A stretch of DNA of 64,000 nucleotides, taken from positions 1 to 64,000 of the IMG/VR virus record IMGVR_UViG_3300009108_000751. The stretch is one strand, 5' to 3'. Under the pieces are notes generated by a model. The model saw only the letters and a list, made by a program, of their open reading frames with translations, ran no database searches and had not been told where the DNA came from. Below, piece by piece: positions 13,589 to 36,024 of this stretch. Position 1 is the first letter of the stretch. Every line of letters starts with the position of its first letter. The position numbers and the translations under genes were made by a program.

Positions 13589-13597
13589 GGGTCTTGT

Positions 13598-14958: not shown

Positions 14959-14967
14959 CCTATTATA

Positions 14968-14996: not shown

Positions 14997-15020
14997 AGCG
15001 GCGAATAGGAGGTGCTGGTT

Positions 15021-15477: not shown

Positions 15478-15486
15478 AGATATAAT
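15458..15486 (+). promoter_or_regulatory. GTGTAA-N17-TATAAT promoter
   Basis: GTGTAA 15458-15463, TATAAT 15481-15486. Confidence 0.8.
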
Positions 15487-15509
15487 AGCCCTGAAGATAA
15501 GGAGCTACG

Positions 15510-15692: not shown

Positions 15693-15694
15693 CA

Positions 15695-15723
15695 GTGTAA
15701 GTCTCCAGGGCTAGTGTTATAAT
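15695..15723 (+). promoter_or_regulatory. GTGTAA-N17-TATAAT promoter
   Basis: GTGTAA 15695-15700, TATAAT 15718-15723. Confidence 0.8.
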
Positions 15724-15749
15724 AGTCCCGAAGATAAGGAGATACCGGC

Positions 15750-15920
15750 ATGGCACAGTGGGGAAACTTTACTGGCGGAGCGGCACCACTGGACGAAGCG
15801 CCAATGGACAGCGGCCCGATGTCTCCGGAGATGCAACGGCGCGTTTTCGATATTCTGGTTAGTACCGGTTCGGATCCCGCGGCACTCAAGGCTTCAGGTG
15901 AATACCCGAATGTTGTGTAA
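15750..15920 (+). CDS. 56-aa hypothetical protein
   Basis: SD AAGGAG; its stop is the TAA of the next GTGTAA. Confidence 0.55.
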   Translation: MAQWGNFTGGAAPLDEAPMDSGPMSPEMQRRVFDILVSTGSDPAALKASGEYPNVV

Positions 15921-15943
15921 CTCCCGTTGGTGGATGTTATAAT
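15915..15943 (+). promoter_or_regulatory. GTGTAA-N17-TATAAT promoter
   Basis: GTGTAA 15915-15920, TATAAT 15938-15943. Confidence 0.8.
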
Positions 15944-15964
15944 AAGGGCGAATAGGAGATGATC

Positions 15965-16260
15965 ATGGCAAGCTCACTCAAAACTTTCAAGGTTGGCTAC
16001 TCCAAGAACGTCGGCTATAAGAAGCACGGCAGTCGCACCGTAAAGGCTCGCAACGCCGAGGAAGCCAAGGTCCGAGTTCGGCACATTGTCGATGGCGCCT
16101 TTGGCCTCTACATTCAGGCTCCTCAAGTATGAGTTACGTCATCGAATATCAGGACAAGATGGGTCGACGTTTCCGAGCCGTGGTGGCCATGCTCCCGCAT
16201 TGCATCAAGGCTAAGAAAGCTGAGCTTCGTGCTCAAGGCTATAGCATTGTTGGTTACTAG
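15965..16260 (+). CDS. two coupled small basic ORFs (15965-16132, 16129-16260)
   Basis: SD AGGAG; ATGA overlap; second stop abuts the next promoter. Confidence 0.55.
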
Positions 16261-16289
16261 GTGTAACTCCCGCAAGGGCATGGTACAAT
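16261..16289 (+). promoter_or_regulatory. GTGTAA-N17-TACAAT promoter
   Basis: GTGTAA 16261-16266, TACAAT 16284-16289. Confidence 0.78.
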
Positions 16290-16313
16290 AGCCGTGAAGA
16301 TAAGGAGTTAGAG

Positions 16314-16589
16314 ATGGCCATCAAAACTGATAAGAGCGTAGGATATCATCCTGGACAGCTGGTCAAGTTCTTCAACCCCTTCAAGGAGCCGTATGAGGAG
16401 CAGATCGCCGAAGGCATCGTAACCTCAGTGGATCATTGGATGCAGACGTTGACCGTAGGTATCGGCAAGGCTCAAGCCCAGGAAGCTGAGTGGTTCGTCG
16501 GCGGACACCAGGTGGTGAAGATGAACAACCCTCACATCGAGGTCGTCCCCGACAAGGTGACTCAGATCTCCAACGTGAAAGATGTGTAA
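16314..16589 (+). CDS. hypothetical protein (SH3-like, HPGQLVKF)
   Basis: SD AAGGAG; its stop is the TAA of the next GTGTAA. Confidence 0.65.
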   Translation: MAIKTDKSVGYHPGQLVKFFNPFKEPYEEQIAEGIVTSVDHWMQTLTVGIGKAQAQEAEWFVGGHQVVKMNNPHIEVVPDKVTQISNVKDV

Positions 16590-16612
16590 CTTCGAGAGCT
16601 GTAAGTTATAAT
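16584..16612 (+). promoter_or_regulatory. GTGTAA-N17-TATAAT promoter
   Basis: GTGTAA 16584-16589, TATAAT 16607-16612. Confidence 0.8.
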
Positions 16613-16636
16613 AGTTCCGAAGATAAGGAGTTAGAG

Positions 16637-16942
16637 ATGACGTTGAATAACATTGACACCCAGTTCGCGGTAGCTCGATCAGAGATCCGTGCCCTGATGA
16701 AGCACGTCAACCCCAACACCACCGTAGGTGGCCAGGCCTGTGACGCCTTGCAAGGTATGATCGATGCGCTGGACTCCATCCAGAACGATAGCTATAAGAG
16801 CTCTGACAGCTTTCATCGCTACCCGCTAGATGTTAGAGATCGGCCTCTGCATGCGGATGACGAACCCACCAATCCTAACTTCCGGGCTTTCAAGGACCTG
16901 GAAGACGACGAGGAAATGCGGCAGACCGAAAGGTTGTGCTAG
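16637..16942 (+). CDS. hypothetical protein
   Basis: Leader ending AAGATAAGGAGTTAGAGATG, same as at 16314; ATG 16637. Confidence 0.65.
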   Translation: MTLNNIDTQFAVARSEIRALMKHVNPNTTVGGQACDALQGMIDALDSIQNDSYKSSDSFHRYPLDVRDRPLHADDEPTNPNFRAFKDLEDDEEMRQTERLC

Positions 16943-16947
16943 CACCG

Positions 16948-16976
16948 GTGTAACTCGGCGAGCTACCGGTTATAAT
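16948..16976 (+). promoter_or_regulatory. GTGTAA-N17-TATAAT promoter
   Basis: GTGTAA 16948-16953, TATAAT 16971-16976. Confidence 0.8.
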
Positions 16977-17020
16977 AAAGACGTAATAAGCCAAACAACA
17001 TACCTGGGGAGGTAACAAAC

Positions 17021-17437
17021 ATGGCAAACGCAGAACGCAAAACTTGGATCCACGGATTCTTCCAAAACACATTCAACGCTGAGACTGGCAACTGGCAGCT
17101 CCGTGATAGCCGTAACGAGGCTCTGATCGCAGAAGGTCCCAAGGCCGCTAAGATCGGCAAGCTCGGTGCAGCTATGACCAAGACTGAGAAGGCGTGGGAC
17201 AAGCTCCGCAACCTGGAACGTCAGATGGAACTGGCGCAGCGCGCTTACAGCAAAGCTCACCGCGTGATGTTGGACCTCCAGCTAGACATCGACATGGAAG
17301 AGGCATCTCGGGCTAGCGTGGAAGGACTTCGCGAAGAGACTCGCAAGAGCCTCCTCCGCATCGCTAAGCGACGCAACATCGTTGGCCGTCACAATCTTAC
17401 CAAGGAAGAACTGGTCAATGCGCTAAGTATCGACTAA
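17021..17437 (+). CDS. coiled-coil protein with C-terminal Rho-N/HeH-like motif
   Basis: LLRIAKRRNIVGRHNLTKEELVNAL resembles the Rho termination factor N-terminal HeH. Confidence 0.6.
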   Translation: MANAERKTWIHGFFQNTFNAETGNWQLRDSRNEALIAEGPKAAKIGKLGAAMTKTEKAWDKLRNLERQMELAQRAYSKAHRVMLDLQLDIDMEEASRASVEGLREETRKSLLRIAKRRNIVGRHNLTKEELVNALSID

Positions 17438-17443
17438 GACATC

Positions 17444-17709
17444 ATGGACAGACTAGAGGCAATACTCTTCGTCGTGCTAGGCATCACCGCTTCGGTGGTG
17501 CTTGGCATATTGGGCGAGGCGGTAGAAGAAAGAGTAAGAACCTGGTTGAGAGATCGGAAGTACGGAGATAAGAAGTGATGAGAAAGATCGCGGCGAAGAT
17601 CCTATTCCTACTAGCGAGAGTGTTCCTCAGTAGGGGGATGCTAGTGGGACAGTGGTGCCAGAACAAGGCCATACTCCTGCTCAGCGGTGTAAGTGCGCAT
17701 CGCGAGTGA
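17444..17709 (+). CDS. two small ORFs (17444-17578 membrane peptide; 17578-17709)
   Basis: TGATG coupling; hydrophobic segments. Confidence 0.4.
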
Positions 17710-17715
17710 TATAAT
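17687..17715 (+). promoter_or_regulatory. GTGTAA-N17-TATAAT promoter (last copy seen)
   Basis: GTGTAA 17687-17692, TATAAT 17710-17715. Confidence 0.8.
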
Positions 17716-17730
17716 GTCAGCGAATAGGAG

Positions 17731-17922
17731 ATGATCATGGAAGGCTTGTGGCTCTTAGCTGGATTCTTCGTGGTGTGGTTCGTGGTGGCGTTCTTACGGT
17801 CGTTCATCGTGTACGCGTGGAAGAACACGGTCAAGGTGTTCGGCGTGGTCGTGGGCATGTTCGGTGTCCTGGCCCTAGGTGTCGGTGTTGCCGCACTGGT
17901 CGCCGTACTGGTCTTAGCCTAG
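17731..17922 (+). CDS. two-helix membrane protein
   Basis: SD AGGAG; almost entirely hydrophobic. Confidence 0.6.
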   Translation: MIMEGLWLLAGFFVVWFVVAFLRSFIVYAWKNTVKVFGVVVGMFGVLALGVGVAALVAVLVLA

Positions 17923-17940
17923 TTCCTGCAGAGGGTACTA

Positions 17941-18150
17941 CGCAGGGGGCCTGGACGCAGGGCGCTAGGGGCGCCGGGCCCTTAGGGGGCTAGGCGCAGG
18001 GGGCCCCCGCAAACTGTGTAGGGGGTACCCGGGGTGGGCTTGGCCTAAGTCTAGACTCACTCTGCTCCAGAATTTTCCGGGAACTTTTTTCAATACTAAA
18101 AAGCCCATTTTCACAAAAATCTCTTCGAGAAAATTTTCGAAAACTTTTTC
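17941..18150. repeat. non-coding G-tract block followed by phased A/T tracts
   Basis: Nine G>=3 runs at 17945-18038 (CGCAGGGGGCC twice), then A/T tracts at 18071-18149. Confidence 0.75.
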
Positions 18151-18213
18151 ATGCCCGACATTCGCACGGTACAATTATTATAATTAAGCACATGTACTAG
18201 CAGGAGACATGTA

Positions 18214-18969
18214 ATGTACGATCTAAGAAAACCAGACGGTACCGGTCGGTTCACCTCAGTCGATGAAGCGATGCGTCACGCCCGGTGGGCGTTCCACTGC
18301 GCTAAGAAAGAACAAAGCAGCATCCCTCTCGATCCCACAAATGAAGCGATCCAGCTCTTGAGCCTTCACGGTATGTCAGGATACATGTACCGTCACTTGC
18401 TCAATAACTTGTGTTCTAGGCAGGGAATCACTTACGGGGAGGTAGGTACGTGGAACGGAAGCACCTGGCTCTCAGCGATCTACAATAATCCGCATATCAC
18501 AGCGTGGACATGCGATAACTGGAGTGAGTTCGGTGGGCCTCAGGCGCAGTTTATTGAGAACTACAAGGTAGTTGGCCGATGGAAAGGCCAGGCAGATATT
18601 TTCAAGAACTCAAATCACAACTCACATGAAGAAGATTTCAGAAAGCTAGATTTCGGCATACATGGCCCAATCGACATCTACTTCTTTGATGGGCCGCACA
18701 GCCGAGAAGACCAGAAGGATGGTATCGTCTTAGCGTGGGACGCTCTGGCGCCCATTTCTATCGTCTTAGTCGATGACTGGAACTTGCAGAAGGCGCGCGA
18801 CGGCACATATATGGCATTTGATCAGGTAGGCGCTAACATTCACATGCAAGTCGAGGTTCACACGCCCCCAGACGGGTGGGTCGCATGCGATTGGTCTAAA
18901 CAGACCAAGACAAGATTCGAAACGTCTGAATGGCACAACGGCGCAGCGCTGTTCGTAATCTCTAAGTAG
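18214..18969 (+). CDS. class I SAM-dependent methyltransferase (Methyltransf_24-like)
   Basis: YGEVGTWNGS, DIYFFDGPH, VLVDDWN; SD AGGAG. Confidence 0.7.
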   Translation: MYDLRKPDGTGRFTSVDEAMRHARWAFHCAKKEQSSIPLDPTNEAIQLLSLHGMSGYMYRHLLNNLCSRQGITYGEVGTWNGSTWLSAIYNNPHITAWTCDNWSEFGGPQAQFIENYKVVGRWKGQADIFKNSNHNSHEEDFRKLDFGIHGPIDIYFFDGPHSREDQKDGIVLAWDALAPISIVLVDDWNLQKARDGTYMAFDQVGANIHMQVEVHTPPDGWVACDWSKQTKTRFETSEWHNGAALFVISK

Positions 18970-19558
18970 CACACACCGCTAGACACGCGAGACACAGCCC
19001 GAACACCAGTGTATTCACTACCCTCTCCTCAGTGCGCCTTAAGGCTCGCTTAGTACGGCGCTTCCATCGCCTTCTGCTCTTCTTCGTCGTGATTCTAAAC
19101 ATCCATGAGAACAGCTGCCAGAGTCCCGAGGTTGCTGCGCATATGCAGCGCCAGACCCAATCCACTAAAACCATCATCCCTTGACCGAATGATTCTACGT
19201 GAGAAGGGTCTAACGCGCGCAAGTGTCGAGTGATCTCCGCGGGAGTCGTACGAAACCACTCTTTGCCGGGAACATCCGTTATATGCCTACTCTTCAGTCT
19301 GCTATGCAAGGAGCGCTCTAATAGGGAGGCGTGTTCGCATGAGATCTCCAATAGGAGGATGGGGGTTTCCGCGTTAGACGCCCCGAGCTGCTGCGCTATC
19401 CTACGCTCCGCACTGCCTGCGCGCGTCATGCCCACCTTGATCGGATAGGGACCGGCTGCGCGTTGATACGAGGAGAATGTGTAAGCGTACACCCGTTCGC
19501 TCCCGCGACCCATGCGCCTCGCGCCCTCTGTGATGACTCTGCGTTTCTTTTTTGCCAT
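18962..19558 (-). CDS. GIY-YIG family (T5orf172/MUG113-like) protein with hydrophobic C-terminus
   Basis: VYAY...IKVGMT...RRIAQ...LERSLHSRL...GKEWF. Confidence 0.7.
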   Translation of the reverse strand: MAKKKRRVITEGARRMGRGSERVYAYTFSSYQRAAGPYPIKVGMTRAGSAERRIAQQLGASNAETPILLLEISCEHASLLERSLHSRLKSRHITDVPGKEWFRTTPAEITRHLRALDPSHVESFGQGMMVLVDWVWRCICAATSGLWQLFSWMFRITTKKSRRRWKRRTKRALRRTEERVVNTLVFGLCLACLAVCAT

Positions 19559-19849
19559 GACTATATCTTACTGTGAGGGTGGACCGTTGTTTTAGCCTGA
19601 GAGGGGGTCTGAGAGGGTTGAGATTGGTTCGGGTTTGATTTAATGGGATGATTTGGGTGTATACGAAGCCCCTATAAAAAAATGTCTTTAAAAGTTACCG
19701 GGCGAGATCGGCATAAGATTTGACAAAATCTTTGAGATCTGACTGGTTTCCTCTCTCATCTAAAGATTGTATAATAATAGCAGCCTTTTTGCATATTTAA
19801 AATATGAAAACCTGCACTTTTCAAGTGCGCGTCGCCCAAGGGATTTAAA

Positions 19850-20833
19850 ATGAAGATAAATGAAGTAGGCCTCCGAGCTATTATTGAAGAAGAACTCAAA
19901 GCTTTCAAAGATCGAAAAAACGTCGCCAACTCGAAACATCCTTCGGATGTGGAACCTGTTGAAGATCCAAATGTTAATGGAATACTCTCAGATGATTTTG
20001 AGCATGTCCCGGAAGATGTCCCCGCAGATGTTGAAAAACCGCAGGCGCGCGTCCAAGACTTGACACCGATCGTTAAAGAGCGCCGATACAGCCTTCGTGC
20101 CTTATTGGAACAGGATCAAGGTGTTACCGCAGAAGATGATCTAGATGGGTGGGCCAAGCAGCCAAAAAATGCTAAAATAGTCCAGGCATGGGCGGATGTC
20201 TTTAAAACAGCAGGAACTACGAAATCAGGAACTGACGATCAGCGCCATGAAACACATAAAATCTTAGCTGCCGTAATGGGACATCCAAAAATAGGTAAAG
20301 ACGAGGATCTAACTACTGTTATGCACAAAATCCAACGGTGGTACCCAGGGCAAGAACGCGGTGAGGTTGAGATAGGTTATGACTTTGATGAGCTTATTGC
20401 CGGCATTCAGAATGCAGCTACATATGCTGGGTATGCTACGGGCGGTAGAGATTCTGCAGGTGAAGTTGATATCAATGAAGCACGTTTTGCAGGCGGGCTT
20501 GGCTTTTCTAACGGTGGCATTTCAGAAGCACATTGTGGATGTGGTGCACCAGATATGAGTATGTCTCACGTCCCATCAGACCACGTTGTAATGGATCTTG
20601 CGGCCGCGGCCAAAGAAGATGAAGAAGTTCGCGATCTAGATCATAGCGATGACGAAGGATCAATGGCTCGATCTCAGTTACGACGTTCTGCTAAATACTC
20701 CCAGAAACTCGAACACATGATTCGTGAATCCGATGACCTTCCTGAGTGGGTTGAGTCCAAGATTACTAAAGCCTCGGACTATCTCGGTTCTGTATATCAC
20801 TACTTGGATTATGAGATCAACGGGAAAAAATAA
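19850..20833 (+). CDS. acidic probable virion/head protein
   Basis: N-terminal MKINEVGLRAIIEEE; C-terminal EGSMARSQL...LPEWVESKITKASDY module recognised from large T4-like phages. Confidence 0.6.
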   Translation: MKINEVGLRAIIEEELKAFKDRKNVANSKHPSDVEPVEDPNVNGILSDDFEHVPEDVPADVEKPQARVQDLTPIVKERRYSLRALLEQDQGVTAEDDLDGWAKQPKNAKIVQAWADVFKTAGTTKSGTDDQRHETHKILAAVMGHPKIGKDEDLTTVMHKIQRWYPGQERGEVEIGYDFDELIAGIQNAATYAGYATGGRDSAGEVDINEARFAGGLGFSNGGISEAHCGCGAPDMSMSHVPSDHVVMDLAAAAKEDEEVRDLDHSDDEGSMARSQLRRSAKYSQKLEHMIRESDDLPEWVESKITKASDYLGSVYHYLDYEINGKK

Positions 20834-26358: not shown

Positions 26359-27528
26359 ATGAGTACTTTTAGAAAACACAAATCTATAGCAGATCGATCA
26401 GCCACCGATCGATCGCGCCATAAGCAAAAAATTGAAAAAGCTTTAAAAGAAGGTATTCGAAATATCGTTGCCGAAGAGTCCATTATTGGCCAAGATGGTA
26501 AGAAAAAAGTTCGGATTCCTGTAAAGGGCATAAAAGAATACCAATTTATCTACGGTGACAACTCTAAAAAGGTTGGTTCCGCACCGGGCAAAGATATTCA
26601 CAGAGGTCAAAAGATTGCTGAGGATAAGGAAGGCAAGAAATCAGGTAACAAGCCTGGGGATAAACCAGGTGAGGAGTTCTACGACGTAGAGATTACATTA
26701 GAGGAGCTTGCAGAATACCTCTTTAGTGATCTTGAGCTTCCTGATCTAGATAAGAAGAAATTTAAGTTTCTGTCGTCCGACACTTTTAGAAGAAAAGGTG
26801 TTCGGCCTAAAGGTATTAGGCCGCGCCTCTCTAAGAAAGAGACTCTTAAACAGAAGATTCGTCGAAAGAAAATGTCTCAAAAAGCTGGGACCTTTAACGA
26901 AGAAGAAGATGAAAGATTTCCTTTTCATGAAGATGATCTTCGATACAAGCATTTCAAAGTAAAAGAAACAGAGATCTCATCTGCAGCAATATTTTTCATT
27001 ATGGATATCTCAGGTTCAATGAGTACTGAAAAGAAGTACATTGCCCGGAGCTTCTTCTTTCTTCTCTACCAGTTTTTGCGACACAAATATGATAATGTTG
27101 AAGTTGTATTTATTGCTCATACAACCACGGCAAAAGAAGTCAGTGAGAATGATTTCTTCAGTCTAGCACCATCCGGTGGAACATTTATCTCACCTGCACT
27201 TGATCTTACACTCGAGGTCGTTGAGAAAAGATATCACCCCAGCAATTGGAATATATACTCTTTTCATTGTTCAGATGGGGATAACTGGTCAGAAGATGAG
27301 GAAAAAGCTTTCAATGCTTCTAAGAAACTTAAGTCAATATCACAGCTTTACGCTTTTTGTGAAATAGATCCTAACGGTGAGTCATCACAGTGGCGCCAGA
27401 ATAATAATTCTAGAATGTGGGAAATTTATCAACCACTTGTAGACAAAGCTTTTAAGACTTTAAAGATGGTTAATGCTAAAGATATCTGGCCTTCATTTAA
27501 GAAGCTTTTTGGTGGGAGATCAGAATAA
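26359..27528 (+). CDS. yeaH: YeaH/YhbH (DUF444) vWA protein
   Basis: DRSRHKQKI, VRIPVKG, DDLRY, MDISGSM (MIDAS), SGGT, SDGDNW. Confidence 0.9.
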   Translation: MSTFRKHKSIADRSATDRSRHKQKIEKALKEGIRNIVAEESIIGQDGKKKVRIPVKGIKEYQFIYGDNSKKVGSAPGKDIHRGQKIAEDKEGKKSGNKPGDKPGEEFYDVEITLEELAEYLFSDLELPDLDKKKFKFLSSDTFRRKGVRPKGIRPRLSKKETLKQKIRRKKMSQKAGTFNEEEDERFPFHEDDLRYKHFKVKETEISSAAIFFIMDISGSMSTEKKYIARSFFFLLYQFLRHKYDNVEVVFIAHTTTAKEVSENDFFSLAPSGGTFISPALDLTLEVVEKRYHPSNWNIYSFHCSDGDNWSEDEEKAFNASKKLKSISQLYAFCEIDPNGESSQWRQNNNSRMWEIYQPLVDKAFKTLKMVNAKDIWPSFKKLFGGRSE

Positions 27529-28835
27529 TGGGATGGACATTTGAAGAACTCCATGCATGGGACGAAAAAATTGTTAAGCTAGCCAAGAAATATAACCTTG
27601 ACTGGTATCCAATTGACTACGAAGTTTGCGACTATCATGATATGATCGGTTACATGTCATACATTGGAATGCCCACTCACTACCAGCATTGGTCGTACGG
27701 CAAGTCCTTTGAACGAACACACACCATGTATAACCTCGGCATGGAGGGATTACCCTACGAGATGATCATCAATAGCGATCCCTCGATATCGTATTTGATG
27801 ACTGAGAACCCTCTTCCTTTGCAAGTTCTTATCATGGCACACTGCGTTGGTCACTCCGACTTCTTCAAAAATAATCGGATGTTTAAGCATACCGATGCAG
27901 CTAATGTGATATCAAGGTTTCGTAATTCTGCAAAGAGGATCAAGAAATATTCTGACAATCCTCACATCGGTGTTGAAGCTGTTGAAAAAGTAATAGATGC
28001 ATGTCATGCTTTAAAGTATCATAACTATCGCGAGTTTGGAATTAGTCGAAAATCTCATCAAGAAATAAAGCAAGCCTATGTTGATATTGCTAACTTTAAA
28101 CCTGAGAAACTCCCAGAAGATTTTGATATCAATAAGATCCCATTAGAGCCTGACTATGATATTCTTGGATTTATAGGAAAACATTCTAGAAATTTAGAGG
28201 ACTGGGAAAGAGATATTATTGATATTGTTCGTCAAGAATCAATGTACTTTATGCCGCAGGCAATGACAAAAATAATGAATGAAGGATGGGCATCATTTTG
28301 GCACTATAAAATAATGTCAGAGCTTGATCTCCCGCAAGAGTTTCACTTGTCTTTTCTTAAATTTCATAATCAGGTTCTCCGGCCAATGGTAGGAAGAATT
28401 AATCCCTATCATCTAGGATTCACAATTTTTAAATGGATTGAGAAAAATAAAGGGCTAGAGGAATGTTTTATAGCAAGGTCTTCTCATAATGACGAATCTT
28501 TTATCAGGTCATATCTCAACAAAGAAATATGTGAAGAACTTAATCTTTTCTCTTACTCTAAAAAGAAAAAAGAATGGACGATAGACGATATATCGGATCA
28601 AGATGGCTGGAAACAGATTAGATCCGATCTCATAAAAAATGTAGGCCTTAACTCTTTGCCAAATATTTATGTCAAGGAGCTTCAAAAGGATCAAACGCTG
28701 GTTTTAGAACACGAGCATGATGGTAGGGATCTAGATCTAGATTACGCACACAATGTATGTGATCATCTTTTAGACCTGTGGGGCGATGACTTTAAATTCT
28801 TTACTGTTATCGAAGATGAGCCTTTCGAGATTTAA
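27528..28835 (+). CDS. spoVR: SpoVR/YcgB family protein
   Basis: HWSYGK, YEMIINSDP, MAHCVGHSDFFKNN, TKIMNEGWASFWH, NPYHLG. Confidence 0.92.
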   Translation: MGWTFEELHAWDEKIVKLAKKYNLDWYPIDYEVCDYHDMIGYMSYIGMPTHYQHWSYGKSFERTHTMYNLGMEGLPYEMIINSDPSISYLMTENPLPLQVLIMAHCVGHSDFFKNNRMFKHTDAANVISRFRNSAKRIKKYSDNPHIGVEAVEKVIDACHALKYHNYREFGISRKSHQEIKQAYVDIANFKPEKLPEDFDINKIPLEPDYDILGFIGKHSRNLEDWERDIIDIVRQESMYFMPQAMTKIMNEGWASFWHYKIMSELDLPQEFHLSFLKFHNQVLRPMVGRINPYHLGFTIFKWIEKNKGLEECFIARSSHNDESFIRSYLNKEICEELNLFSYSKKKKEWTIDDISDQDGWKQIRSDLIKNVGLNSLPNIYVKELQKDQTLVLEHEHDGRDLDLDYAHNVCDHLLDLWGDDFKFFTVIEDEPFEI

Positions 28836-28881
28836 ACTCCTACATATTAGTGTGTATTATTGAAAGTGTGGAGCATCAAGA

Positions 28882-30813
28882 ATGACTAAATCTAAATTTG
28901 CTGATTTAATTAGCCAGCAGAGATCTGAAAAGAAGGATGTATCCTTTAAGGGTACTTTTCTAGAATATCTGGAAGTTGTTGAGAAAAATCCAAAGATTGC
29001 AGCCTTGGCTCATAGAAGACTTTTTGATGTTCTTGCAGAAGACGGTATTGAAGTACTAGATGAAACAGATGAGAGATGCCGCCGCCTATTTGATAGTGAA
29101 AAGACAAAGACTTACAACTATTTCCAACCGCATTTCTTCGGCATGGAAAGATCTCTAGCAAAAGTGATGAGATTCCTCAGTTCTGCTGCTATGAAGGGTG
29201 AGGAAAGTCGACAAGTACTTCTACTCCTAGGCCCGGTCGGCGCCGGAAAATCTGCCCTGATCGAACACATTAAAAGAGGCCTAGAAAGAGCAGAGCATAT
29301 CTATCATTTAGATGGCTGCCCAATCAGAGAAGAACCTCTACATCTCGTACCTCGCTCTCTCCGCAGCAAGTTTGAGGAAATGCTCGGCATTAAAATAGAA
29401 GGCGATCTTTGCCCTGTATGTCGACACCGACTTTTAGAAGAGTTTGGTGGGAAATATGAGAATTTTCCTGTAAAACAATCCTCTTTCTCAATTAGAGGTA
29501 GAAGAGGTGTAGGTGTTGTACCCCCTGTCGATGCCAACACTCAAGATACTTCAATTCTTATAGGCTCAGAGGACATCTCGAAGTTGGATCTGTATCCCGA
29601 GGATGATCCCAGAGTGCTTTCCTTGAACGGGGCCTTTAATGTTGGTAACAGAGGTATCGTTGAGTTCGTAGAGGTCTTTAAGAATGAGATTGAATTTCTA
29701 CACACAATGATCACGGCAACACAGGAGAAGGCAGTTCCCTCTCCTGGTAAAGGTGCCATGATTTACTTTGACGGTGTCATCCTTGCACACTGCAACGAAG
29801 CGGAATGGAACCGATTTAAATCCACACACACAAATGAAGCTATACTTGATCGAATCGTCAAGGTTAATGTCCCGTACTGCCTAGAACTTGACGAGGAGGT
29901 AAAGATTTACCAGAAGATGTTGAAGATGTCTGATTTCGATGCCCACATTGCACCACACACACTTGAGGTTGCATCGATGTTTGCAGTTATGTCTCGATTA
30001 AAACCTTCTGGTAAAGTTGATCCTTTGGTTAAGATGAAGATTTATAACGGGGAGGACATCATCGAAAAGGGAAGAGTCAAGAAGGTCGACATCAAAGATC
30101 TTCGTGAGGAATCCCGCGATGAAGGTATGACCGGTATCTCAACACGCTTCATCACCAAAGCGATCGATTCAGCGCTTTCTGATTCTGATAGAAATATGGT
30201 TACCCCAATTTCAGTTAGAGATTCCCTTATCAAGCAAGTCAAAGAACAGATTATCGATGAGGAAGCTAGAGAGCGCTATCTCCAATACCTTCAAAAAGAT
30301 CTTCATGAAGAATACTTAAGGATCTTGGAGAAGGAGATTACCAAGGCTTTTGTAAGTGCTTACGAAGAACAAGCAGAGGCCCTTTTTGATAACTACCTTG
30401 ATCATGCCGAGGCTTATGTTAATAAGTCAAGAGTAAAAGATAAGGTGACACGTGAAGAGATGGAGCCAGATGAAAACTTCATGAAATCCATCGAGGAAAA
30501 TATTGGCATTACAGGCTCTGCTAGAGACGGATTTAGATCTGATGTTACTACTTACATGTTTACTCTTCTTCGCGCTAAAAAGAAGATTGACTGGAAAGCT
30601 TATGGCCCTCTCAAGGAAGCCATTGAGAATAAACTGATGTCATCTGTAAAAGATATGTCCAGAATTGTTACAAAGTCAAAATCCCGCGATAATAAACAGC
30701 AAAAGAAATACGGTGATATGGTGTCTACGCTTATCGAAGACTACGGCTACAATGAAGATTCTGCAGAAGAAGTAATTAAATTTGCGGCCAATAATCTCTG
30801 GAGAGATGGTTAA
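28882..30813 (+). CDS. prkA: PrkA/YeaG AAA+ ATPase / serine kinase
   Basis: FFGMER, Walker A GPVGAGKS, CPIREEPL, NRGIVEFVEVFK, EAILDRI, EGMTGISTRF. Confidence 0.92.
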   Translation: MTKSKFADLISQQRSEKKDVSFKGTFLEYLEVVEKNPKIAALAHRRLFDVLAEDGIEVLDETDERCRRLFDSEKTKTYNYFQPHFFGMERSLAKVMRFLSSAAMKGEESRQVLLLLGPVGAGKSALIEHIKRGLERAEHIYHLDGCPIREEPLHLVPRSLRSKFEEMLGIKIEGDLCPVCRHRLLEEFGGKYENFPVKQSSFSIRGRRGVGVVPPVDANTQDTSILIGSEDISKLDLYPEDDPRVLSLNGAFNVGNRGIVEFVEVFKNEIEFLHTMITATQEKAVPSPGKGAMIYFDGVILAHCNEAEWNRFKSTHTNEAILDRIVKVNVPYCLELDEEVKIYQKMLKMSDFDAHIAPHTLEVASMFAVMSRLKPSGKVDPLVKMKIYNGEDIIEKGRVKKVDIKDLREESRDEGMTGISTRFITKAIDSALSDSDRNMVTPISVRDSLIKQVKEQIIDEEARERYLQYLQKDLHEEYLRILEKEITKAFVSAYEEQAEALFDNYLDHAEAYVNKSRVKDKVTREEMEPDENFMKSIEENIGITGSARDGFRSDVTTYMFTLLRAKKKIDWKAYGPLKEAIENKLMSSVKDMSRIVTKSKSRDNKQQKKYGDMVSTLIEDYGYNEDSAEEVIKFAANNLWRDG

Positions 30814-30827: not shown

Positions 30828-32153
30828 ATGAGATCCCGAGTAGAGAGAAAAAATCTAAAGAAGGAATCAAGACAGTTCTTAAAAAACCTTGAAGCTCTTA
30901 CTCGTATTCAAGAGCGCAACTCAAAGGTTGCATTTTTAATGTCTAATTCCCCAAGAACTTCTGGAAGCATTCTTCTTTCTTTGCTTTCTTATTCACCTGC
31001 AAACAGAACTGAAAATATTTTCAAGCAGATCGTGATTAATCACGTCTTAAAATGTGAAAAAACATCTGCAATGTCATCTTCTACTATGATTAAAATGCTT
31101 ATAGACCTAACCAGGAAATCTGATAATCTAAGCAGCATGGGTATCAAAGATAAAGAAAAATCTATAAGAAAAGATGTAGATGACATATTTGATGCCATTC
31201 AGGAAAAAATGTCTAGGCCAACTTTGAGAACCTTAGAGGATTACCTAAAAATAAATTTTGACAAAACAACATCTTCTCTTGTTTTGGAGTCTCTAAAATT
31301 ATCAGGAATGTCAGGAAAGTTATCTTTTGAGCATAGCAATATTCCTAATCCCATTATAGAATCTAATGCCAGCTATATCTTTGAAATAGAACCAGACCCT
31401 AACCTTCTTTTACAGTCAGACTTCATGTGGGCAAAAAAAGATGTTTCTGTCTTGTGCATAGAAGGCTTTATAGAAAAAGTTTCCGAAATAGATGTAATAC
31501 TTTCTTCATTAGCAGAAAGAAAAGGTAATGCAGTCATTATCTGTCTCGGATACTCTCCTGAAGTTGTCTCAACTATTATAGCGAACAACGCCCGCGGAAC
31601 ATTTAATGTAATGCTTTGTAAGCCCAGCCAAGAAGAAGAAGCCATAAATGATATTTTCGACATGTCAGCCGCATCAGGATCATGCTTCTACGGATTCCAG
31701 ACAGGTACAATATCTACTTCATTTTCTCCCGAGCACCTAGATAGCACAAATGAAGAGGTCGTAATAACTGAGAATAAGATAAGCATCAAAAGCTCTATAT
31801 CCAAGAATTCTGCTAACACAAGGGCAGAAAAGATAAGAGAGCAGCTCGGTGAGAGTGATTTAAAAGATGACTACCTTAAAAGAAGAATAACCTCGCTTAC
31901 ATCCAACCAGGTTAAAATAAATCTGCCTGAAAAAACGTCACAGGAAAAATTTAGTCAAATTGAGAAAATTGATACTGCACTTAGATGTGCCAATGCGATT
32001 ACTAGATTTGGGATAATCGATATTCCGGAATCAAGCATTATACCAGGTAGCGGACGACAGATAGCATCTTCAATTTACATTGGATGCAAATATGGATATG
32101 AATTATTTAAGCAGTTATCTTCTATCGACACTGCGATCGTTTTAGATGACTAA
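30828..32153 (+). CDS. groEL: divergent GroEL/chaperonin-60 homologue lacking ATPase motifs
   Basis: Apical and intermediate domains align by eye (VLCIEGFIEKVSEI..IL, VIICLGYSPEV..TIIAN..RG, KRRITSL, IDTALRCA..GII); no GDGTTT or GPKG. Confidence 0.7.
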   Translation: MRSRVERKNLKKESRQFLKNLEALTRIQERNSKVAFLMSNSPRTSGSILLSLLSYSPANRTENIFKQIVINHVLKCEKTSAMSSSTMIKMLIDLTRKSDNLSSMGIKDKEKSIRKDVDDIFDAIQEKMSRPTLRTLEDYLKINFDKTTSSLVLESLKLSGMSGKLSFEHSNIPNPIIESNASYIFEIEPDPNLLLQSDFMWAKKDVSVLCIEGFIEKVSEIDVILSSLAERKGNAVIICLGYSPEVVSTIIANNARGTFNVMLCKPSQEEEAINDIFDMSAASGSCFYGFQTGTISTSFSPEHLDSTNEEVVITENKISIKSSISKNSANTRAEKIREQLGESDLKDDYLKRRITSLTSNQVKINLPEKTSQEKFSQIEKIDTALRCANAITRFGIIDIPESSIIPGSGRQIASSIYIGCKYGYELFKQLSSIDTAIVLDD

Positions 32154-32164
32154 GGAGAGAAAAA

Positions 32165-32386
32165 ATGAGTTTGCAAAATGATGTAACTTACAGCGTAAAA
32201 GCAATTATCGAAGAGGTAAAAGCACAGATTGAAAGAAATTTCAATACAGCAATCAACAATAATATGCTGACTATCGACAAGGAAAAGCTTCCTGGAATTT
32301 GTAAGCTTGCTAATGATTCAGTAGATCAGGCTTTCATTGAGAAATCTGACTTGCTAATTAACGCTCTTAGACGCCATAGCAAGTAG
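32165..32386 (+). CDS. hypothetical protein
   Basis: SD AAGGAG. Confidence 0.6.
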   Translation: MSLQNDVTYSVKAIIEEVKAQIERNFNTAINNNMLTIDKEKLPGICKLANDSVDQAFIEKSDLLINALRRHSK

Positions 32387-32390
32387 TTTA

Positions 32391-32867
32391 ATGAAAAGTG
32401 CTGAGAAGCATTTAATTCAATGCCACTGTATTCTGCCCCAGTACAGAGGCAAGCCAGACCCTGTTTTTCATAAGTTTACAGTTTTTTCTATTCTTGAAAA
32501 CGATAAGGTAGTTGAAAAGCTGGCACAGTGTCCAAACTGCGGCGTCATTCACAAAGTTGTAGATGTTTGCAAAAGTGAGATTGCGTCAGGAAAAGATGAA
32601 ACAAAGTCTATCATTGAAATTAAAGACATTAAGTTCGGATTACCACCTCGCCTAGTTGAAATTCTAGAATCCTATAGCTGTGATCTTCCTGCATGGGAGC
32701 ATGCACAGTTTATATTAGATGAAAAAAGGTGGGGAGAAAAAGTAAGAGTTTCCTACGAGGAAAATGAGGATGATACTTTTGCAAAGTTTCTGGTATTTGT
32801 AGATGAAGACCAGTATAGGATATCTTCGTCATCAAGTCAAAGCTTTTTAGGAGATAGTGATGAGTGA
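32391..32867 (+). CDS. hypothetical Cys/His zinc-binding protein
   Basis: QCHC...QCPNCGVIHKV.D.C. Confidence 0.6.
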   Translation: MKSAEKHLIQCHCILPQYRGKPDPVFHKFTVFSILENDKVVEKLAQCPNCGVIHKVVDVCKSEIASGKDETKSIIEIKDIKFGLPPRLVEILESYSCDLPAWEHAQFILDEKRWGEKVRVSYEENEDDTFAKFLVFVDEDQYRISSSSSQSFLGDSDE

Positions 32868-33114
32868 AATAAAGAAATACGGTGAAAATGATACTGATAA
32901 ATGGGTAAAAGAAATGTCTATGTCTCGAGAGATAGTCCTAGAAATTCTTAGGCATGGCGTAAGTCAATCCCAGATAAATCAGATAATTGGCCTCCTGGCT
33001 CTTGAGCTTGAGAATAGAGAGCTTCTAACAGGATATAGAGGCATCTATAAGATGTCCCAAGGTGAAACAGTCGAGGGTGTTAAATCTACCTCAAAGATTA
33101 TTCTAGATAGCTAA
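32857..33114 (+). CDS. hypothetical protein
   Basis: SD AGGAG; overlaps the previous stop. Confidence 0.55.
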   Translation: MMSEIKKYGENDTDKWVKEMSMSREIVLEILRHGVSQSQINQIIGLLALELENRELLTGYRGIYKMSQGETVEGVKSTSKIILDS

Positions 33115-33889: not shown

Positions 33890-34072
33890 ATGAGCAAAGT
33901 CATAGATAAGTGGGAAGAATTGAAAGTTCTGATAGAGAGCTTGGAGCTGGATATTCACAAGAATGCCCGAGGAAACAAAAGTGCAGGAACTCGTGCACGA
34001 AAAGGATTGCGTCTCTTGAAGAACGCAGCAGCAGACTTAGTCAAGACTTCGCTAGAAGAAGGCAAAGACTAA
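33890..34072 (+). CDS. histone H1-like Hc1 family protein
   Basis: KNARGNKSAGTRARK matches the Hc1 family GNKAAxxRxR motif. Confidence 0.7.
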   Translation: MSKVIDKWEELKVLIESLELDIHKNARGNKSAGTRARKGLRLLKNAAADLVKTSLEEGKD

Positions 34073-34086: not shown

Positions 34087-34408
34087 GGGGCCGACACGGT
34101 ATCGACGTGGTCGGATGTTGAAGGTGATGCAAGTCCTGGAGGTGCCCGGCCAGGTAAAAAGGCACAAAATAATAATCGCAAACGACGATTTTGATATATA
34201 CGCAATCGCTGCTTAAAAACCAGTAGATGTGTGAGGCGGCAACAGCCAATAAACAGAAAGTTGCTTGAGATAAGGTTCGACTTACTCCTTTTAAAAGTAA
34301 GCATTTTTTTGAGATGAGCTTGCTGGAGCCAAAAACCAGCTAAACTTGTAAATGAATCCCTACAATTGATGGTTGCGGACGCGGGTTCGATTCCCGCCGG
34401 CTCCACCA
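34087..34408 (+). ncRNA. ssrA: tmRNA; tag ORF 34178-34216 encodes ANDDFDIYAIAA
   Basis: 5' GGGGCCG pairs with 3' CGGCTCC-A-CCA including the G3:U70 Ala determinant; T arm GCGGG-TTCGATT-CCCGC; resume codon after AATAATC; tag ends in AA-stop. Confidence 0.95.
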
Positions 34409-34440: not shown

Positions 34441-34683
34441 TTAATCAGGAAGGGAAGACTTAAGCTTGCCCAGAATACTTTTCTCTATTTGGCAGATTCT
34501 CATTCGTGTCAAGTCAAACACTTCCCCAATTTCCTGCAATGTCTTAGGACCTTCTTTGGCACTTATCAAAACACAATTAAAGTCTTTTTTGCAGTCGATC
34601 CAATTTTTACACTCTTTTTTGCGACATGGCATGTTTTTATCAGAGTGCGCATCAAAACATGTTTGCTTTAAAAAAATACTCAT
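34441..34683 (-). CDS. stand-alone sigma-70 region 4 HTH protein with Cys-rich N-terminus
   Basis: PKTLQEIGEVFDLTRMRICQIEK vs sigma70 TLEEVGKQFDVTRERIRQIEA. Confidence 0.75.
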   Translation of the reverse strand: MSIFLKQTCFDAHSDKNMPCRKKECKNWIDCKKDFNCVLISAKEGPKTLQEIGEVFDLTRMRICQIEKSILGKLKSSLPD

Positions 34684-34710: not shown

Positions 34711-36024
34711 GTGAAAAAGACATTTATTCTTGATACTAACGTTCTTCTCTATGATGCAGAATGTCTGCTGTCCTTTGATGATAATAATATAATCATTCCT
34801 CTAATTGTTTTAGAAGAATTAGATGATCATAAGCGCAGACCTGACGAAGTAGGAAAAAATGCGCGAAAATCAGTTAGGCTTCTCGATAAGTTTAGAGAGA
34901 AAGGATCCTTAAGCGAAGGGATCGAGCTGGATAGCGGCGGAACGCTTACTATCCTGGGAAGCGAACAGATTACATGTCCTTTCCCAGCAGACTTAGATAA
35001 AAGCTCTGTAGATAACGTAATTCTTGCGATGACAAAATGCCTCCAAGATACTCGAGAAGAAAAAGTAATACTTGTAACAAAGGACATAAACGTAAGAGTG
35101 AAATGTGATGCCCTGGGAATCACATGTGAAGATTTCAATAAGCACAAGATAATCGACAAATCAGAAGGGCTTTACACAGGGGTAAGGAGGCTAAGTGCGC
35201 CGCAATCCTTGATTGACAAAGTCTATACAGATCGAGAGATACCTGTCCCTGAAGAAATCATTGGTGAAGAACTTTACGCAAACGAATTCATAGTAATGAA
35301 AGATGAAAGTACCGGTCAGGGCTCAGCAATCGTTCGACATATTAAGAAATCTAATACGCTCAGACTTATTCCAGAAATAAAAAGCTCCTGGGGCTTAATT
35401 CCTAGAAACAAGGAGCAGAAATTTTCATTTGATATACTTTTCGATGACAATATTAAGCTCATTACGTTGGTAGGAAAAGCCGGAACTGGGAAAACGTTGC
35501 TTGCAGCATCTGCAGCACTAGAGCAAGCATTCTCTAAAGACGGTAAGTATAAAAAGGTGGTTATCTCCCGCCCCGTCCAGGCTGTAGGCAAAGATATCGG
35601 ATATCTCCCGGGAGATATCTACGATAAGATGGCACCCTGGATTGCACCAATAAGGGACAATCTCCGGTATCTTTTCGGAGACGATAAAGACACGCTGGAC
35701 ATGTACATTGAAAGCGGAAAGATAGAGATTGAAGCCATAACTTACATCAGAGGAAGATCGATCTCCGACGCGATTATAATAATTGATGAAGCACAAAATC
35801 TAACAACTCATGAGCTTAAGACAATCATCACCCGGGTAGGTGAAAACACAAAGATAATATTGACAGGTGATGTTGATCAAATCGATAATACATACCTGGA
35901 TGCCACATCAAACGGCTTAAGTTACACGGTGGAAAAATTTAAAGAATATGATATTTCTGCACATGTAACGCTCTTAAAGGGTGAAAGATCAGAGCTGGCA
36001 AGCTTAGGCGCTGAAATCCTATAA
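34711..36024 (+). CDS. phoH: PIN-PhoH (PhoH2/YlaK-type) ATPase
   Basis: FILDTNVLL, VLEELD, TKDIN; GKAGTGKT, RGRS, IIDEAQN, GDVDQID. Confidence 0.92.
   Translation: MKKTFILDTNVLLYDAECLLSFDDNNIIIPLIVLEELDDHKRRPDEVGKNARKSVRLLDKFREKGSLSEGIELDSGGTLTILGSEQITCPFPADLDKSSVDNVILAMTKCLQDTREEKVILVTKDINVRVKCDALGITCEDFNKHKIIDKSEGLYTGVRRLSAPQSLIDKVYTDREIPVPEEIIGEELYANEFIVMKDESTGQGSAIVRHIKKSNTLRLIPEIKSSWGLIPRNKEQKFSFDILFDDNIKLITLVGKAGTGKTLLAASAALEQAFSKDGKYKKVVISRPVQAVGKDIGYLPGDIYDKMAPWIAPIRDNLRYLFGDDKDTLDMYIESGKIEIEAITYIRGRSISDAIIIIDEAQNLTTHELKTIITRVGENTKIILTGDVDQIDNTYLDATSNGLSYTVEKFKEYDISAHVTLLKGERSELASLGAEIL

What the first reader, a model, noticed from the sequence alone, without database searches (positions are those of the whole stretch)
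30828..32153. Apparently ATPase-dead GroEL homologue
Seen: a clear GroEL-like intermediate/apical region. The GDGTTT loop aligns to SAMSSS, GPKG is absent, the catalytic D398 position (EDAL) reads DTAL, and the C-terminal equatorial part is much shortened (441 aa). No groES is nearby. Known: characterised phage chaperonins (EL, OBP, AR9) retain ATPase activity. Inference: an ATP-independent holdase, a dominant modifier of host GroEL rings, or a repurposed scaffold.
Basis: partly seen in the sequence, partly recalled or inferred. Interest (0 to 1): 0.6.

Follow-up and report, generated by a model that had tools for sequence, protein, structure and literature searches.

The report
Phage GroEL look-alike without ATP site
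A large uncultured marine phage that already has a normal GroEL chaperonin also carries a second, conserved GroEL-shaped protein that has lost every ATP-binding element, and this protein belongs to a big unnamed virus-only family whose job is still unknown.

Summary
Window 30828-32153 (+) encodes a 441-aa protein with the full three-domain GroEL fold: VIA-align Z 26, rmsd 4.1 Å over 438 residues; hhalign probability 98.5%. It is too diverged for Pfam to detect.

Every nucleotide-contacting element of GroEL is replaced or deleted. This covers TLGPKG, D52, GDGTTT, D398, GGG414-416 and the N479/A480/D495 region. About 80 residues of the C-terminal equatorial domain, including the inter-ring contacts, are missing as an internal deletion.

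The gene is not decaying. dN/dS is about 0.11 in three close pairs, and all relatives are intact.

It is one member of a large unnamed family. A profile search gave 706 clusters at E ≤ 1e-30, and none of 144 aligned representatives has GDG[TS][TS] or G[PA]KG. Relatives turned up only in metagenomes and viral contigs. Conservation sits in the apical domain rather than the equatorial domain.

The same 235-kb phage record also encodes a canonical GroEL and no GroES.

Function is inferred, not shown. The protein most likely works without ATP as a binding or scaffold module, possibly alongside the phage's own GroEL. It is a new variant of a known kind, and interest is moderately high.

The parts
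30828..32153 (+). GroEL-fold 'pseudo-chaperonin' ORF, 441 aa (P0001)
   Evidence: ORF list and translation. GroEL homology. Fold match Z 26.2. dN/dS about 0.11.
30828..31202 (+). N-terminal equatorial part (aa 1-125). Helices A-E, strand 3-6 and the hairpin 34-45 are kept. The GPKG, D52 and GDGTTT equivalents are lost.
   Evidence: Secondary structure of the model. Alignment to E. coli GroEL. Least conserved part of the family.
31203..31367 (+). N-terminal intermediate segment (aa 126-180)
   Evidence: Model and alignment.
31368..31904 (+). Apical domain (aa 181-359), the most conserved part. It carries the family motif IEGFIEKVSEID. E245, T249, N253 and R256 match GroEL E257, T261, N265 and R268. 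GroEL L234 is replaced by invariant D222.
   Evidence: The apical domain alone superposes on solved GroEL apical domains at Z 23, rmsd 1.9 Å. Conservation: 24 of 179 columns are at least 80% one residue, against 1 of 171 in the equatorial parts. Residue mapping.
31905..32012 (+). C-terminal intermediate segment (aa 360-395). It is the helix M equivalent, with DTAL in place of EDAL, and keeps the hinge glycine G395 (GroEL G410).
32013..32150 (+). Remnant of the C-terminal equatorial part (aa 396-441). GroEL about 417-496 is missing. The last helix (413-431) and strand (436-439) are kept.
   Evidence: The region between the G410 and P496 equivalents has a median of 34 aa in the family, 85 in E. 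coli, and fewer still in this clade.
32165..33114 (+). Three small ORFs (73, 158 and 85 aa) directly downstream. They diverge together with the GroEL-like gene. The 158-aa ORF is a conserved Cys/His zinc-ribbon-type protein.
   Evidence: Identity to L003 is 44, 62 and 60%, while flanking genes are 91-97% identical. Alignments A4 and A5. Homologues of the 158-aa ORF lie near the GroEL-like gene in distant phage contigs.
26359..30813 (+). Upstream neighbours DUF444 (YeaH-like), SpoVR (YcgB-like) and PrkA (YeaG-like). This is context, and the linkage is specific to one lineage.
   Evidence: Pfam. The same order is seen in L003, L021-23, L029/30, L034-36 and L057. PrkA is absent from G001 and G002, which still carry the GroEL-like gene.
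34711..36024 (+). PIN-PhoH (PhoH2-like) gene, the most persistent neighbour of the family. This is context.
   Evidence: Pfam. It lies within about 1-3 kb of the GroEL-like gene in the window, L050-L053, L055, L056, L057 and the P0040 contig, in two orientations.

Best explanation
The ORF encodes a catalytically dead paralogue of the group I chaperonin GroEL, which I call a 'pseudo-chaperonin'. It belongs to a large, unnamed family found so far only in uncultured large phages.

**Shown**
- It keeps the complete three-domain GroEL fold. This includes hinge 1 and the N-terminal strand, C-terminal strand and hairpin that build the intra-ring sheet in GroEL.
- All residues that bind ATP/Mg in GroEL are replaced or deleted.
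- About 80 residues of the equatorial domain are gone. In GroEL these form half of the nucleotide pocket and both inter-ring contacts.
- The gene is under purifying selection.
- Within the family, conservation is concentrated in the apical domain. The helix H/I groove is partly changed from hydrophobic to charged: L234 becomes D/H and V263 is often K.
- The same phage has a canonical GroEL and no GroES.

**Inferred**
- The protein cannot run an ATP-driven folding cycle.
- It works as a nucleotide-independent binding or scaffold module that recognises one or a few specific partners through its remodelled apical domain.
- It is probably held permanently in the 'open' domain arrangement that GroEL reaches only with ATP and GroES.
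- It probably serves phage protein assembly or handling next to the phage's own GroEL.
For: **Fold**
- P0001 model: pLDDT 84.8. Foldseek E 1e-23 to GroEL/Hsp60. VIA Z 26.2, rmsd 4.1 Å over 438 aa. Apical domain alone Z 23, rmsd 1.9 Å.
- Family medoid P0033: pLDDT 96.2, pTM 0.87. Z 28.4, rmsd 3.2 Å to GroES-bound GroEL, against about 11 Å to apo GroEL.

**Loss of the ATP site**
- Shown by alignment and across 144 representatives.

**Selection**
- dN/dS is 0.107, 0.106 and 0.109 in three pairs with usable dS.
- All relatives are intact at 420-510 aa.

**Where conservation lies**
- 24 of 179 apical columns are conserved, against 1 of 171 equatorial columns. The same trend holds inside the clade.

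**Family size and range**
- 706 clusters at E ≤ 1e-30.
- No member in 50,697 GenBank phage records with three diverse queries.
- None in 185,579 species genomes by pattern scan.
- Contigs reach up to 252-461 kb.

**Canonical GroEL in the same records**
- A canonical GroEL is present in G000, G001 and G002.
- No Cpn10 is found in any of them.
Against: - There is no biochemical, expression or proteomic evidence. Only DNA runs hold the locus.
- The oligomeric state is unknown; the one complex job gave no verdict.
- A non-canonical nucleotide site cannot be excluded from sequence alone.
- The 'open' conformation is an AlphaFold prediction and may be biased.
- Co-occurrence with a canonical GroEL is seen in three related, incomplete records (45-70% complete). 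It may reflect shared ancestry rather than cooperation.
- The partner or client is not identified.
- The fast divergence relative to neighbours (43% identity against 97% for PrkA) is not explained by a simple housekeeping role.
Confidence: 0.55

Rival explanations
1. It is a dedicated partner of the phage's own canonical GroEL. It could be a non-hydrolysing subunit of mixed rings, as ATP use differs among subunits of hetero-oligomeric chaperonins. Or it could be a co-factor or adaptor that stands in for the missing GroES or delivers clients.
For: - Canonical GroEL and the GroEL-like gene co-occur in all three large records examined (G000, G001, G002).
- None of them has a Cpn10.
- The strands and hairpin that make the intra-ring sheet in GroEL are kept.
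- The equivalents of GroEL E257, T261, N265 and R268 are invariant.
Against: - The three records are kin and incomplete, so this may be a single evolutionary event.
- The two genes lie 22-170 kb apart.
- Characterised phage GroELs need no co-chaperonin (Kurochkina 2012, as cited in PMC5649160).
- A subunit lacking about 80 equatorial residues would leave a gap in a mixed ring.
- No interaction test was possible.
Confidence: 0.2
2. It is an accessory of a neighbouring module: the PIN-PhoH RNA helicase/nuclease with its small-gene block, or the PrkA-SpoVR-DUF444 stress module. It would act as a scaffold or specificity factor for that ATPase rather than as a general chaperone.
For: - PIN-PhoH lies within about 1-3 kb of the gene in at least eight distinct lineages, in two orientations.
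- In this lineage the gene follows PrkA by 14 nt, and it overlaps PrkA in L003.
- The downstream small ORFs co-vary with it.
Against: - Conserved gene order among related phages is weak evidence of function.
- PrkA was not found in G001 or G002.
- PrkA-bearing Thermus and Ralstonia phages have no GroEL-like neighbour.
- PrkA and PIN-PhoH are far more conserved than the GroEL-like gene.
Confidence: 0.12
3. It targets the host chaperonin system, either by poisoning host GroEL rings or by sequestering host GroES.
For: It has the same fold as GroEL, and the ring-forming strands are retained.
Against: - Host GroEL and GroES are highly conserved, whereas this protein diverges to 43% identity where PrkA stays at 97%.
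- The GroES-binding groove residues are changed: L234 to D, and Y199 and Y203 are not kept.
- The phage brings its own GroEL.
Confidence: 0.05
4. It is still an ATPase that uses a non-canonical site.
For: An Asp (D382) is conserved one residue before the D398 position, in 129 of 144 members.
Against: - All phosphate-, Mg- and adenine-contacting elements are lost.
- Half of the pocket is deleted.
- The equatorial domain is the least conserved part.
Confidence: 0.05
5. It is a decaying relic of a duplicated groEL.
For: It diverges quickly relative to its neighbours.
Against: - dN/dS is about 0.11.
- Hundreds of intact relatives have conserved length.
- Models are confident.
- Family-specific invariant residues exist.
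Confidence: 0.02

Closest known systems
GroEL / Cpn60, group I chaperonin (Pfam PF00118, TIGR02348)
   Same: - The three-domain fold is the same over the whole length (Z 26-28).
- Hinge glycine G410 is kept.
- The apical residues E257, T261, N265 and R268 are kept.
- The terminal strands and stem hairpin are kept.
   Different: - It falls below every curated HMM threshold.
- No ATP-binding motif remains.
- GroEL about 417-496, which includes the inter-ring contacts, is deleted.
- The substrate/GroES groove is partly charged.
- Conservation is highest in the apical domain rather than the equatorial domain.
Phage-encoded chaperonins (Pseudomonas phage EL gp146, OBP gp246, Bacillus phage AR9)
   Same: - They are encoded by large phages.
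- They have the GroEL fold: EL gp146 chains match at Z 22-23 and AR9 GroEL is found in BFVD.
- No phage GroES is present.
   Different: - Those proteins are full length (about 545-560 aa), were solved with ATP analogues (PDB 6tmt and 6tmx titles), and are ATP-dependent.
- This protein has no nucleotide site.
- The window's phage has such a canonical chaperonin as a separate gene.
GroEL apical-domain 'minichaperones' (e.g. PDB 1kid, 1fy9)
   Same: The apical domain superposes at rmsd 2.4-2.5 Å. From the literature as I know it, they show that a GroEL apical domain can bind non-native proteins without ATP.
   Different: They are engineered fragments with the native hydrophobic groove. Here the whole three-domain protein is kept and the groove is remodelled.
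Eukaryotic chaperonin-like proteins BBS6/MKKS, BBS10 and BBS12 (my own knowledge, not tested here)
   Same: They are chaperonin-fold paralogues with degenerate ATP-site motifs, and they act as assembly factors alongside a canonical chaperonin (CCT).
   Different: They derive from group II chaperonins and are eukaryotic. There is no sequence relationship beyond the superfamily. This is an analogy only.
Mycobacterial Cpn60.1 (GroEL1)
   Same: It is a second, non-essential GroEL paralogue with impaired oligomerisation and a specialised role (abstract of PMC13673040).
   Different: Cpn60.1 keeps the ATP-binding motifs and the full length.

Membership tests
Group I chaperonin GroEL/Cpn60 | Three-domain (equatorial-intermediate-apical) fold | tested here: met
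   - Foldseek E 1e-23.
- VIA Z 26.2, rmsd 4.1 Å over 438 aa.
- Family medoid Z 28.4, rmsd 3.2 Å over 457 aa.
Group I chaperonin GroEL/Cpn60 | Scores above the curated thresholds of the family models (PF00118, TIGR02348) | tested here: not met
   - Pfam gives no hit at E 10.
- 0 of 17 diverse relatives hit any Pfam family.
- TIGR02348 scores 32 bits against a cut-off of 582.
Group I chaperonin GroEL/Cpn60 | Nucleotide-binding elements: T30-G35 (TLGPKG), D52, G86-T91 (GDGTTT), D398, G414-G416, N479/A480, I493/D495 | tested here: not met
   All are replaced or deleted in P0001 and 16 relatives. None of 144 family representatives has GDG[TS][TS] or G[PA]KG.
Group I chaperonin GroEL/Cpn60 | Hydrophobic substrate/GroES groove on helices H and I (Y199, Y203, F204, L234, L237, L259, V263, V264) | tested here: not met
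   - L234 becomes invariant D222 (D/H/E/N across the family).
- Y199 and Y203 are not kept.
- V263 is often K.
- L237, L259 and F204 stay hydrophobic.
Group I chaperonin GroEL/Cpn60 | Assembly into heptameric rings, double or single | tested here: inconclusive
   The elements of the intra-ring sheet are kept in the models. Both inter-ring contact sites are deleted. The complex job gave no verdict.
Group I chaperonin GroEL/Cpn60 | ATP hydrolysis-driven folding cycle | not testable with these tools
   This needs a purified protein. Sequence predicts that it is absent.
Phage chaperonins of the EL gp146 / OBP / AR9 type | Full-length, ATP-dependent GroEL homologue that works without GroES | tested here: not met
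   Length is 441 aa against about 530-560, and no ATP site remains. The genome's other gene, P0028 (531 aa, 673 bits to TIGR02348), fits this family instead.
New family proposed here: phage pseudo-chaperonins | Length of about 420-510 aa and a GroEL fold. Markers: G at GroEL K225, E at S228, D/H at L234, G at D253, T261 and N265 kept, D at E397. The 411-496 region is shortened and there are no ATP motifs. | tested here: met
   P0001 carries G213, E216, D222, G241, T249, N253 and D382. Frequencies in 144 representatives are 142, 122, 123 (D or H), 124, 143, 144 and 129.

The most novel reading that the evidence does not exclude
The family is a nucleotide-free chaperonin-fold machine part. It would form a ring, or a cap, permanently fixed in the 'open' GroES-bound-like conformation. 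It would act as the dedicated co-factor of the phage's GroES-less GroEL, or as a passive assembly cage for one phage protein. That would be a mode of chaperonin action without an ATP cycle, not described for group I chaperonins.
Probability: 0.15. Interest if true: 0.85.

Novelty: new variant of a known kind. Interest (0 to 1): 0.66.

Why it matters
Chaperonins are textbook ATP-driven machines, and their ATP site is the most conserved part of the protein. Every characterised phage GroEL keeps it.

Here a family reverses that pattern. It is large and diverse, with hundreds of clusters at 50% identity, and it is under purifying selection. The fold and the apical domain are kept, while the ATP pocket and the inter-ring surface are discarded.

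If the protein is active, it shows what a GroEL body can do without an ATP cycle. It also gives a natural system for asking which chaperonin functions (binding, encapsulation, assembly) depend on nucleotide.

The family also marks an uncultured clade of large marine phages. Curated family models currently miss it.

Tried and rejected
- **Complex prediction** with two copies of P0001 (alignment A1): no answer, score 0.00, controls not run. This is not evidence either way.
- **Promoter and terminator scan** of 25.0-36.2 kb: counts at chance level, so no operon boundaries could be drawn.
- **General PrkA link?** Thermus phage TMA and Ralstonia phage RsoM2USA carry DUF444-SpoVR-PrkA. Their extra neighbours are unrelated: TMA_057 gives hhalign probability 0.15%, and RsoM2USA_26 is an amidoligase.
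- **tblastn against GenBank phages** with P0001, P0033 and P0157: only weak hits to canonical GroELs.
- **Pattern scan of 185,579 species genomes**: no relative. The first attempt failed on the server.
- **Sequencing runs**: marine and seawater DNA runs only, with no RNA run, so there is no expression evidence.
- **The 73-aa downstream ORF as a hidden GroES**: no Cpn10 match anywhere in the genome. Its fold was not predicted.
- **Literature searches**: no description of an ATP-site-less phage GroEL. The marine viral chaperonin survey kept only GroEL sequences spanning E. coli residues 8-514 (PMC5649160), so it would have missed this family.
- **Phylogeny of origin** (duplication of the phage GroEL or separate capture): not attempted, because about 16% identity to GroEL would give a long-branch artefact.
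- **Recombination as the cause of the variable cassette**: could not be judged, because synonymous sites are saturated in the informative pairs.
Full report
**1. What is at the coordinates**

Window 30828-32153 (+) is an intact ATG-started ORF of 441 codons. It starts 14 nt after the stop of a PrkA gene. The window is the first 64 kb of a 235,681-bp IMG/VR virus record, which is linear and about 70% complete by CheckV. The locus is held by marine and seawater metagenome runs from at least two studies.

**2. Is it a GroEL homologue?**

Yes, but a remote one.
- Pfam finds nothing even at E 10.
- NCBIfam GroEL models reach E 2e-12, but only 46 bits against a cut-off of 352.
- PHROG 5725 'chaperonin groEL' gives E 1e-13.
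- phmmer against PDB gives E 1.5e-7, collinear from query 107-397 to GroEL 113-411.
- A 22-sequence family profile aligns to GroEL with hhalign probability 98.5% (E 1.5e-15, 370 columns).
- An AlphaFold2 model built from that alignment has pLDDT 84.8. Its top 50 PDB matches are all GroEL/Hsp60 (Foldseek E 1e-23).
- VIA-align gives Z 26.2, rmsd 4.1 Å over 438 of 441 residues. The apical domain alone gives Z 23, rmsd 1.9 Å.
- BFVD returns phage GroELs, including AR9.

**3. The ATP site**

I aligned the protein and 16 relatives with E. coli GroEL (taken from a RefSeq genome), the phage's own GroEL and a bacterial GroEL.

| GroEL element | In this protein |
|---|---|
| T30-G35 (TLGPKG) | QERNSK; deleted in distant relatives |
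| K51/D52 | G/S |
| G86-T91 (GDGTTT) | S80-S85 loop (SAMSSS) between the helix C and D equivalents; no Asp in any register |
| E397-D398 (EDAL) | D382-T383 (DTAL); the D398 column is T/I/A/V/S/Y/L/R/K |
| G414-G416 | I-P-E |
| N479, A480, I493, D495 | fall in a deletion |

The secondary structure of the model shows what is kept. All N-terminal equatorial helices remain. So do strand 3-6, the hairpin 34-45, the helix M equivalent (371-394), the final helix (413-431) and the final strand (436-439).

The equivalents of GroEL helices N-Q and the 476-485 hairpin (about 417-496) are absent. That segment also carries both inter-ring contact sites: E434, R452, E461, S463 and V464.

**4. Not a decaying gene**

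The word-index search found 24 relatives of 422-469 aa at 41-90% identity. All were intact and all came from metagenomes.

Nei-Gojobori dN/dS for the three pairs with unsaturated dS:

| Pair | dN/dS | dS |
|---|---|---|
| Window - L034 | 0.107 | 0.53 |
| Window - L035 | 0.106 | 1.31 |
| L036 - L021 | 0.109 | 0.55 |

PrkA gives 0.014-0.034 in the same pairs. The other accessory genes give 0.05-0.14. Selection is therefore purifying, but looser than on the neighbours.

**5. A large hidden family**

My novelty claim rests on the extent and nature of relatives, so I ran the exhaustive profile search.
- It returned 6,112 hits at E ≤ 1e-3 and 706 at E ≤ 1e-30.
- The best 150 are almost all 418-509 aa and cover the whole profile; five are shorter fragments (233-378 aa).
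- Aligned with E. coli GroEL, 144 representatives show mean pairwise identity of 26% and a median of 16.5% to GroEL.
- None contains GDG[TS][TS] or G[PA]KG.
- The D398 column is I/V/L/T/N.
- The stretch between the G410 and P496 equivalents has a median of 34 residues, against 85 in E. coli.

Family-specific markers are nearly invariant:

| GroEL position | Residue in the family | Count out of 144 |
|---|---|---|
| K225 | G | 142 |
| S228 | E | 122 |
| L234 | D or H | 123 |
| D253 | G | 124 |
| T261 | T | 143 |
| N265 | N | 144 |
| G410 | G | 140 |

Conservation is inverted relative to what is established for GroEL. 24 of 179 apical columns are at least 80% one residue, against 1 of 171 equatorial columns. 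The same gradient holds inside the close clade.

The family medoid P0033 (468 aa) was folded with 146 sequences. It gives pLDDT 96.2 and pTM 0.87, and matches GroEL at Z 28.4. It keeps two short C-terminal equatorial helices that the window's clade has also lost.

Both models superpose far better on GroES-bound or ATP-state subunits (rmsd 3.2-4.8 Å) than on apo GroEL (about 11 Å). This is a prediction. It suggests a fixed 'open' domain arrangement. The hinge-2 glycine G375 is lost throughout the family.

**6. Where the family occurs**

They sit on contigs of up to 252 kb.
- IMG/VR holds ten other contigs, including ones of 461, 245 and 207 kb.
- tblastn with three diverse members finds no member in 50,697 GenBank phage records.
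- A pattern scan finds none in 185,579 species genomes.
- None of 17 diverse members hits any Pfam family.
- The ESM Atlas fold search returns a viral 'hypothetical protein' cluster.

**7. Genomic context**

In the window's lineage the gene order is: DUF444, SpoVR, PrkA, GroEL-like, ORFs of 73, 158 and 85 aa, a nucleotidyltransferase-like gene, Hc1, tmRNA, a sigma70_r4 ORF on the minus strand, PIN-PhoH, and then a long glycosyltransferase cluster.

Against L003 the flanks are highly conserved in protein sequence: PrkA 97%, DUF444 94%, SpoVR 91%, nucleotidyltransferase 91% and Hc1 95%. The GroEL-like gene is only 43% identical, and the three small ORFs are 44, 62 and 60%. These four genes form a fast-evolving cassette. 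Synonymous sites are too saturated to tell recombination from rate.

In more distant lineages PrkA is not nearby, and it is not found at all in G001 and G002. PIN-PhoH stays within about 1-3 kb in every contig examined, in divergent or co-directional orientation. A homologue of the 158-aa zinc-ribbon ORF is often close.

Other PrkA-bearing phages (Thermus TMA, Ralstonia RsoM2USA) have no GroEL-like neighbour.

**8. A canonical GroEL in the same genome**

The record encodes a 531-aa GroEL about 170 kb away. It scores 673 bits to TIGR02348. TLGPKG, GDGTTT and GGG are intact, and the catalytic D398 equivalent is kept within DDAL.

The two other large related records also have both genes. No Cpn10 is found in any of them. 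All of these records are incomplete and related to each other, so this counts as one observation, not three.

**9. Interpretation**

What is shown:
- The GroEL fold is present.
- The ATP site is lost across the whole family.
- The inter-ring surface is deleted.
- Selection is purifying and centred on a remodelled apical domain.
- A canonical GroEL is present in the same genome.

What is inferred:
- The protein cannot cycle with ATP.
- It acts as a nucleotide-independent binding or scaffold module for specific partners.

The ranked alternatives are these:
- a partner of the phage GroEL;
- an accessory of the PIN-PhoH or PrkA modules;
- interference with the host chaperonin;
- a cryptic ATPase;
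- a relic.

No tool available here could test binding. The single complex job returned no verdict.

**10. Comparison with known systems and novelty**

The protein has the fold of group I chaperonins. It fails the family's defining functional features and its curated models, so I do not file it as a GroEL.

Functionally, the nearest analogies are two. One is the ATP-independent GroEL apical 'minichaperones'. The other, from my own knowledge, is the eukaryotic BBS6/10/12 chaperonin-like assembly factors.

I found no paper describing such a phage family. The main survey of marine viral chaperonins kept only GroEL sequences spanning E. coli residues 8-514 (PMC5649160).

Verdict: a real feature and a new variant of a known kind. 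The function is open. Interest is 0.66.

Noticed in passing
window 34087-34408 (+): A phage-encoded tmRNA lies between the Hc1-like ORF and PIN-PhoH. ARAGORN gives the tag ANDDFDIYAIAA. Rfam RF00023 scores 137.8 bits against a gathering score of 47, over the full-length model.
   Followed up: partly
G000:C1 about 201,938-203,533 (L002:814-2409), outside the window: The same phage record has a canonical 531-aa GroEL (673 bits to TIGR02348) with TLGPKG, GDGTTT and GGG intact and the catalytic Asp (D398 equivalent) kept. No Cpn10/GroES is found in the 235-kb record.
   Followed up: yes
window 26359-30813 (+): A complete DUF444 (YeaH) - SpoVR (YcgB) - PrkA (YeaG) module sits in a phage. It is very highly conserved among relatives: PrkA is 94-98% identical, with dN/dS 0.01-0.03. 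Only 17 GenBank phage records carry a PrkA, at no more than 34% identity.
   Followed up: partly
window 30828-33114 versus its flanks: The GroEL-like gene and the three small ORFs after it form a fast-diverging cassette, 43-62% identical to L003. The genes on both sides are 91-97% identical. Recombination and rate could not be separated.
   Followed up: partly
window 32391-32867 (+): A 158-aa protein has invariant H-x3-C-x-C and C-x2-C-G-x2-H motifs, so it is probably zinc-binding. It is conserved at about 40% identity in distant large-phage contigs, often near the GroEL-like gene. It has no Pfam family. Atlas clusters are viral hypotheticals.
   Followed up: partly
window 1-20000 versus 24000-64000: There is a sharp composition shift inside one viral record: about 50-56% GC in the first 20 kb against 37-44% afterwards. 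The GC-rich part holds a DUF2201 metallopeptidase/VWA gene, a PLP-dependent enzyme, two Methyltransf_24 genes, a KaiC/RecA-like ATPase and tRNA-Met (5198-5274). A chimeric assembly or a recent acquisition was not examined.
   Followed up: no
window 33890-34072 (+) and 34441-34683 (-): There is a 60-aa Hc1 (chlamydial histone H1-like) ORF, 87-95% identical across relatives within the window's close clade (61% in the more distant L012 and L029/L030). There is also an 80-aa ORF matching sigma-70 region 4 in syntenic relatives.
   Followed up: no
window 36046-64000 (+): A long co-directional run of about 25 genes begins with a 650-aa GT2 protein. By synteny with L003, L006 and L008 it includes GT1 and GT2 glycosyltransferases, methyltransferases, an epimerase and a UDP-glucose dehydrogenase-type gene. 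This looks like a large phage-borne glycan synthesis cluster.
   Followed up: no
G002:C1:152556-154409 (L038, L042, L044): The canonical GroEL of a related 245-kb phage record lies in a 635-aa open frame. The TIGR02348 match is split into three pieces, which suggests insertions in its C-terminal equatorial part.
   Followed up: no
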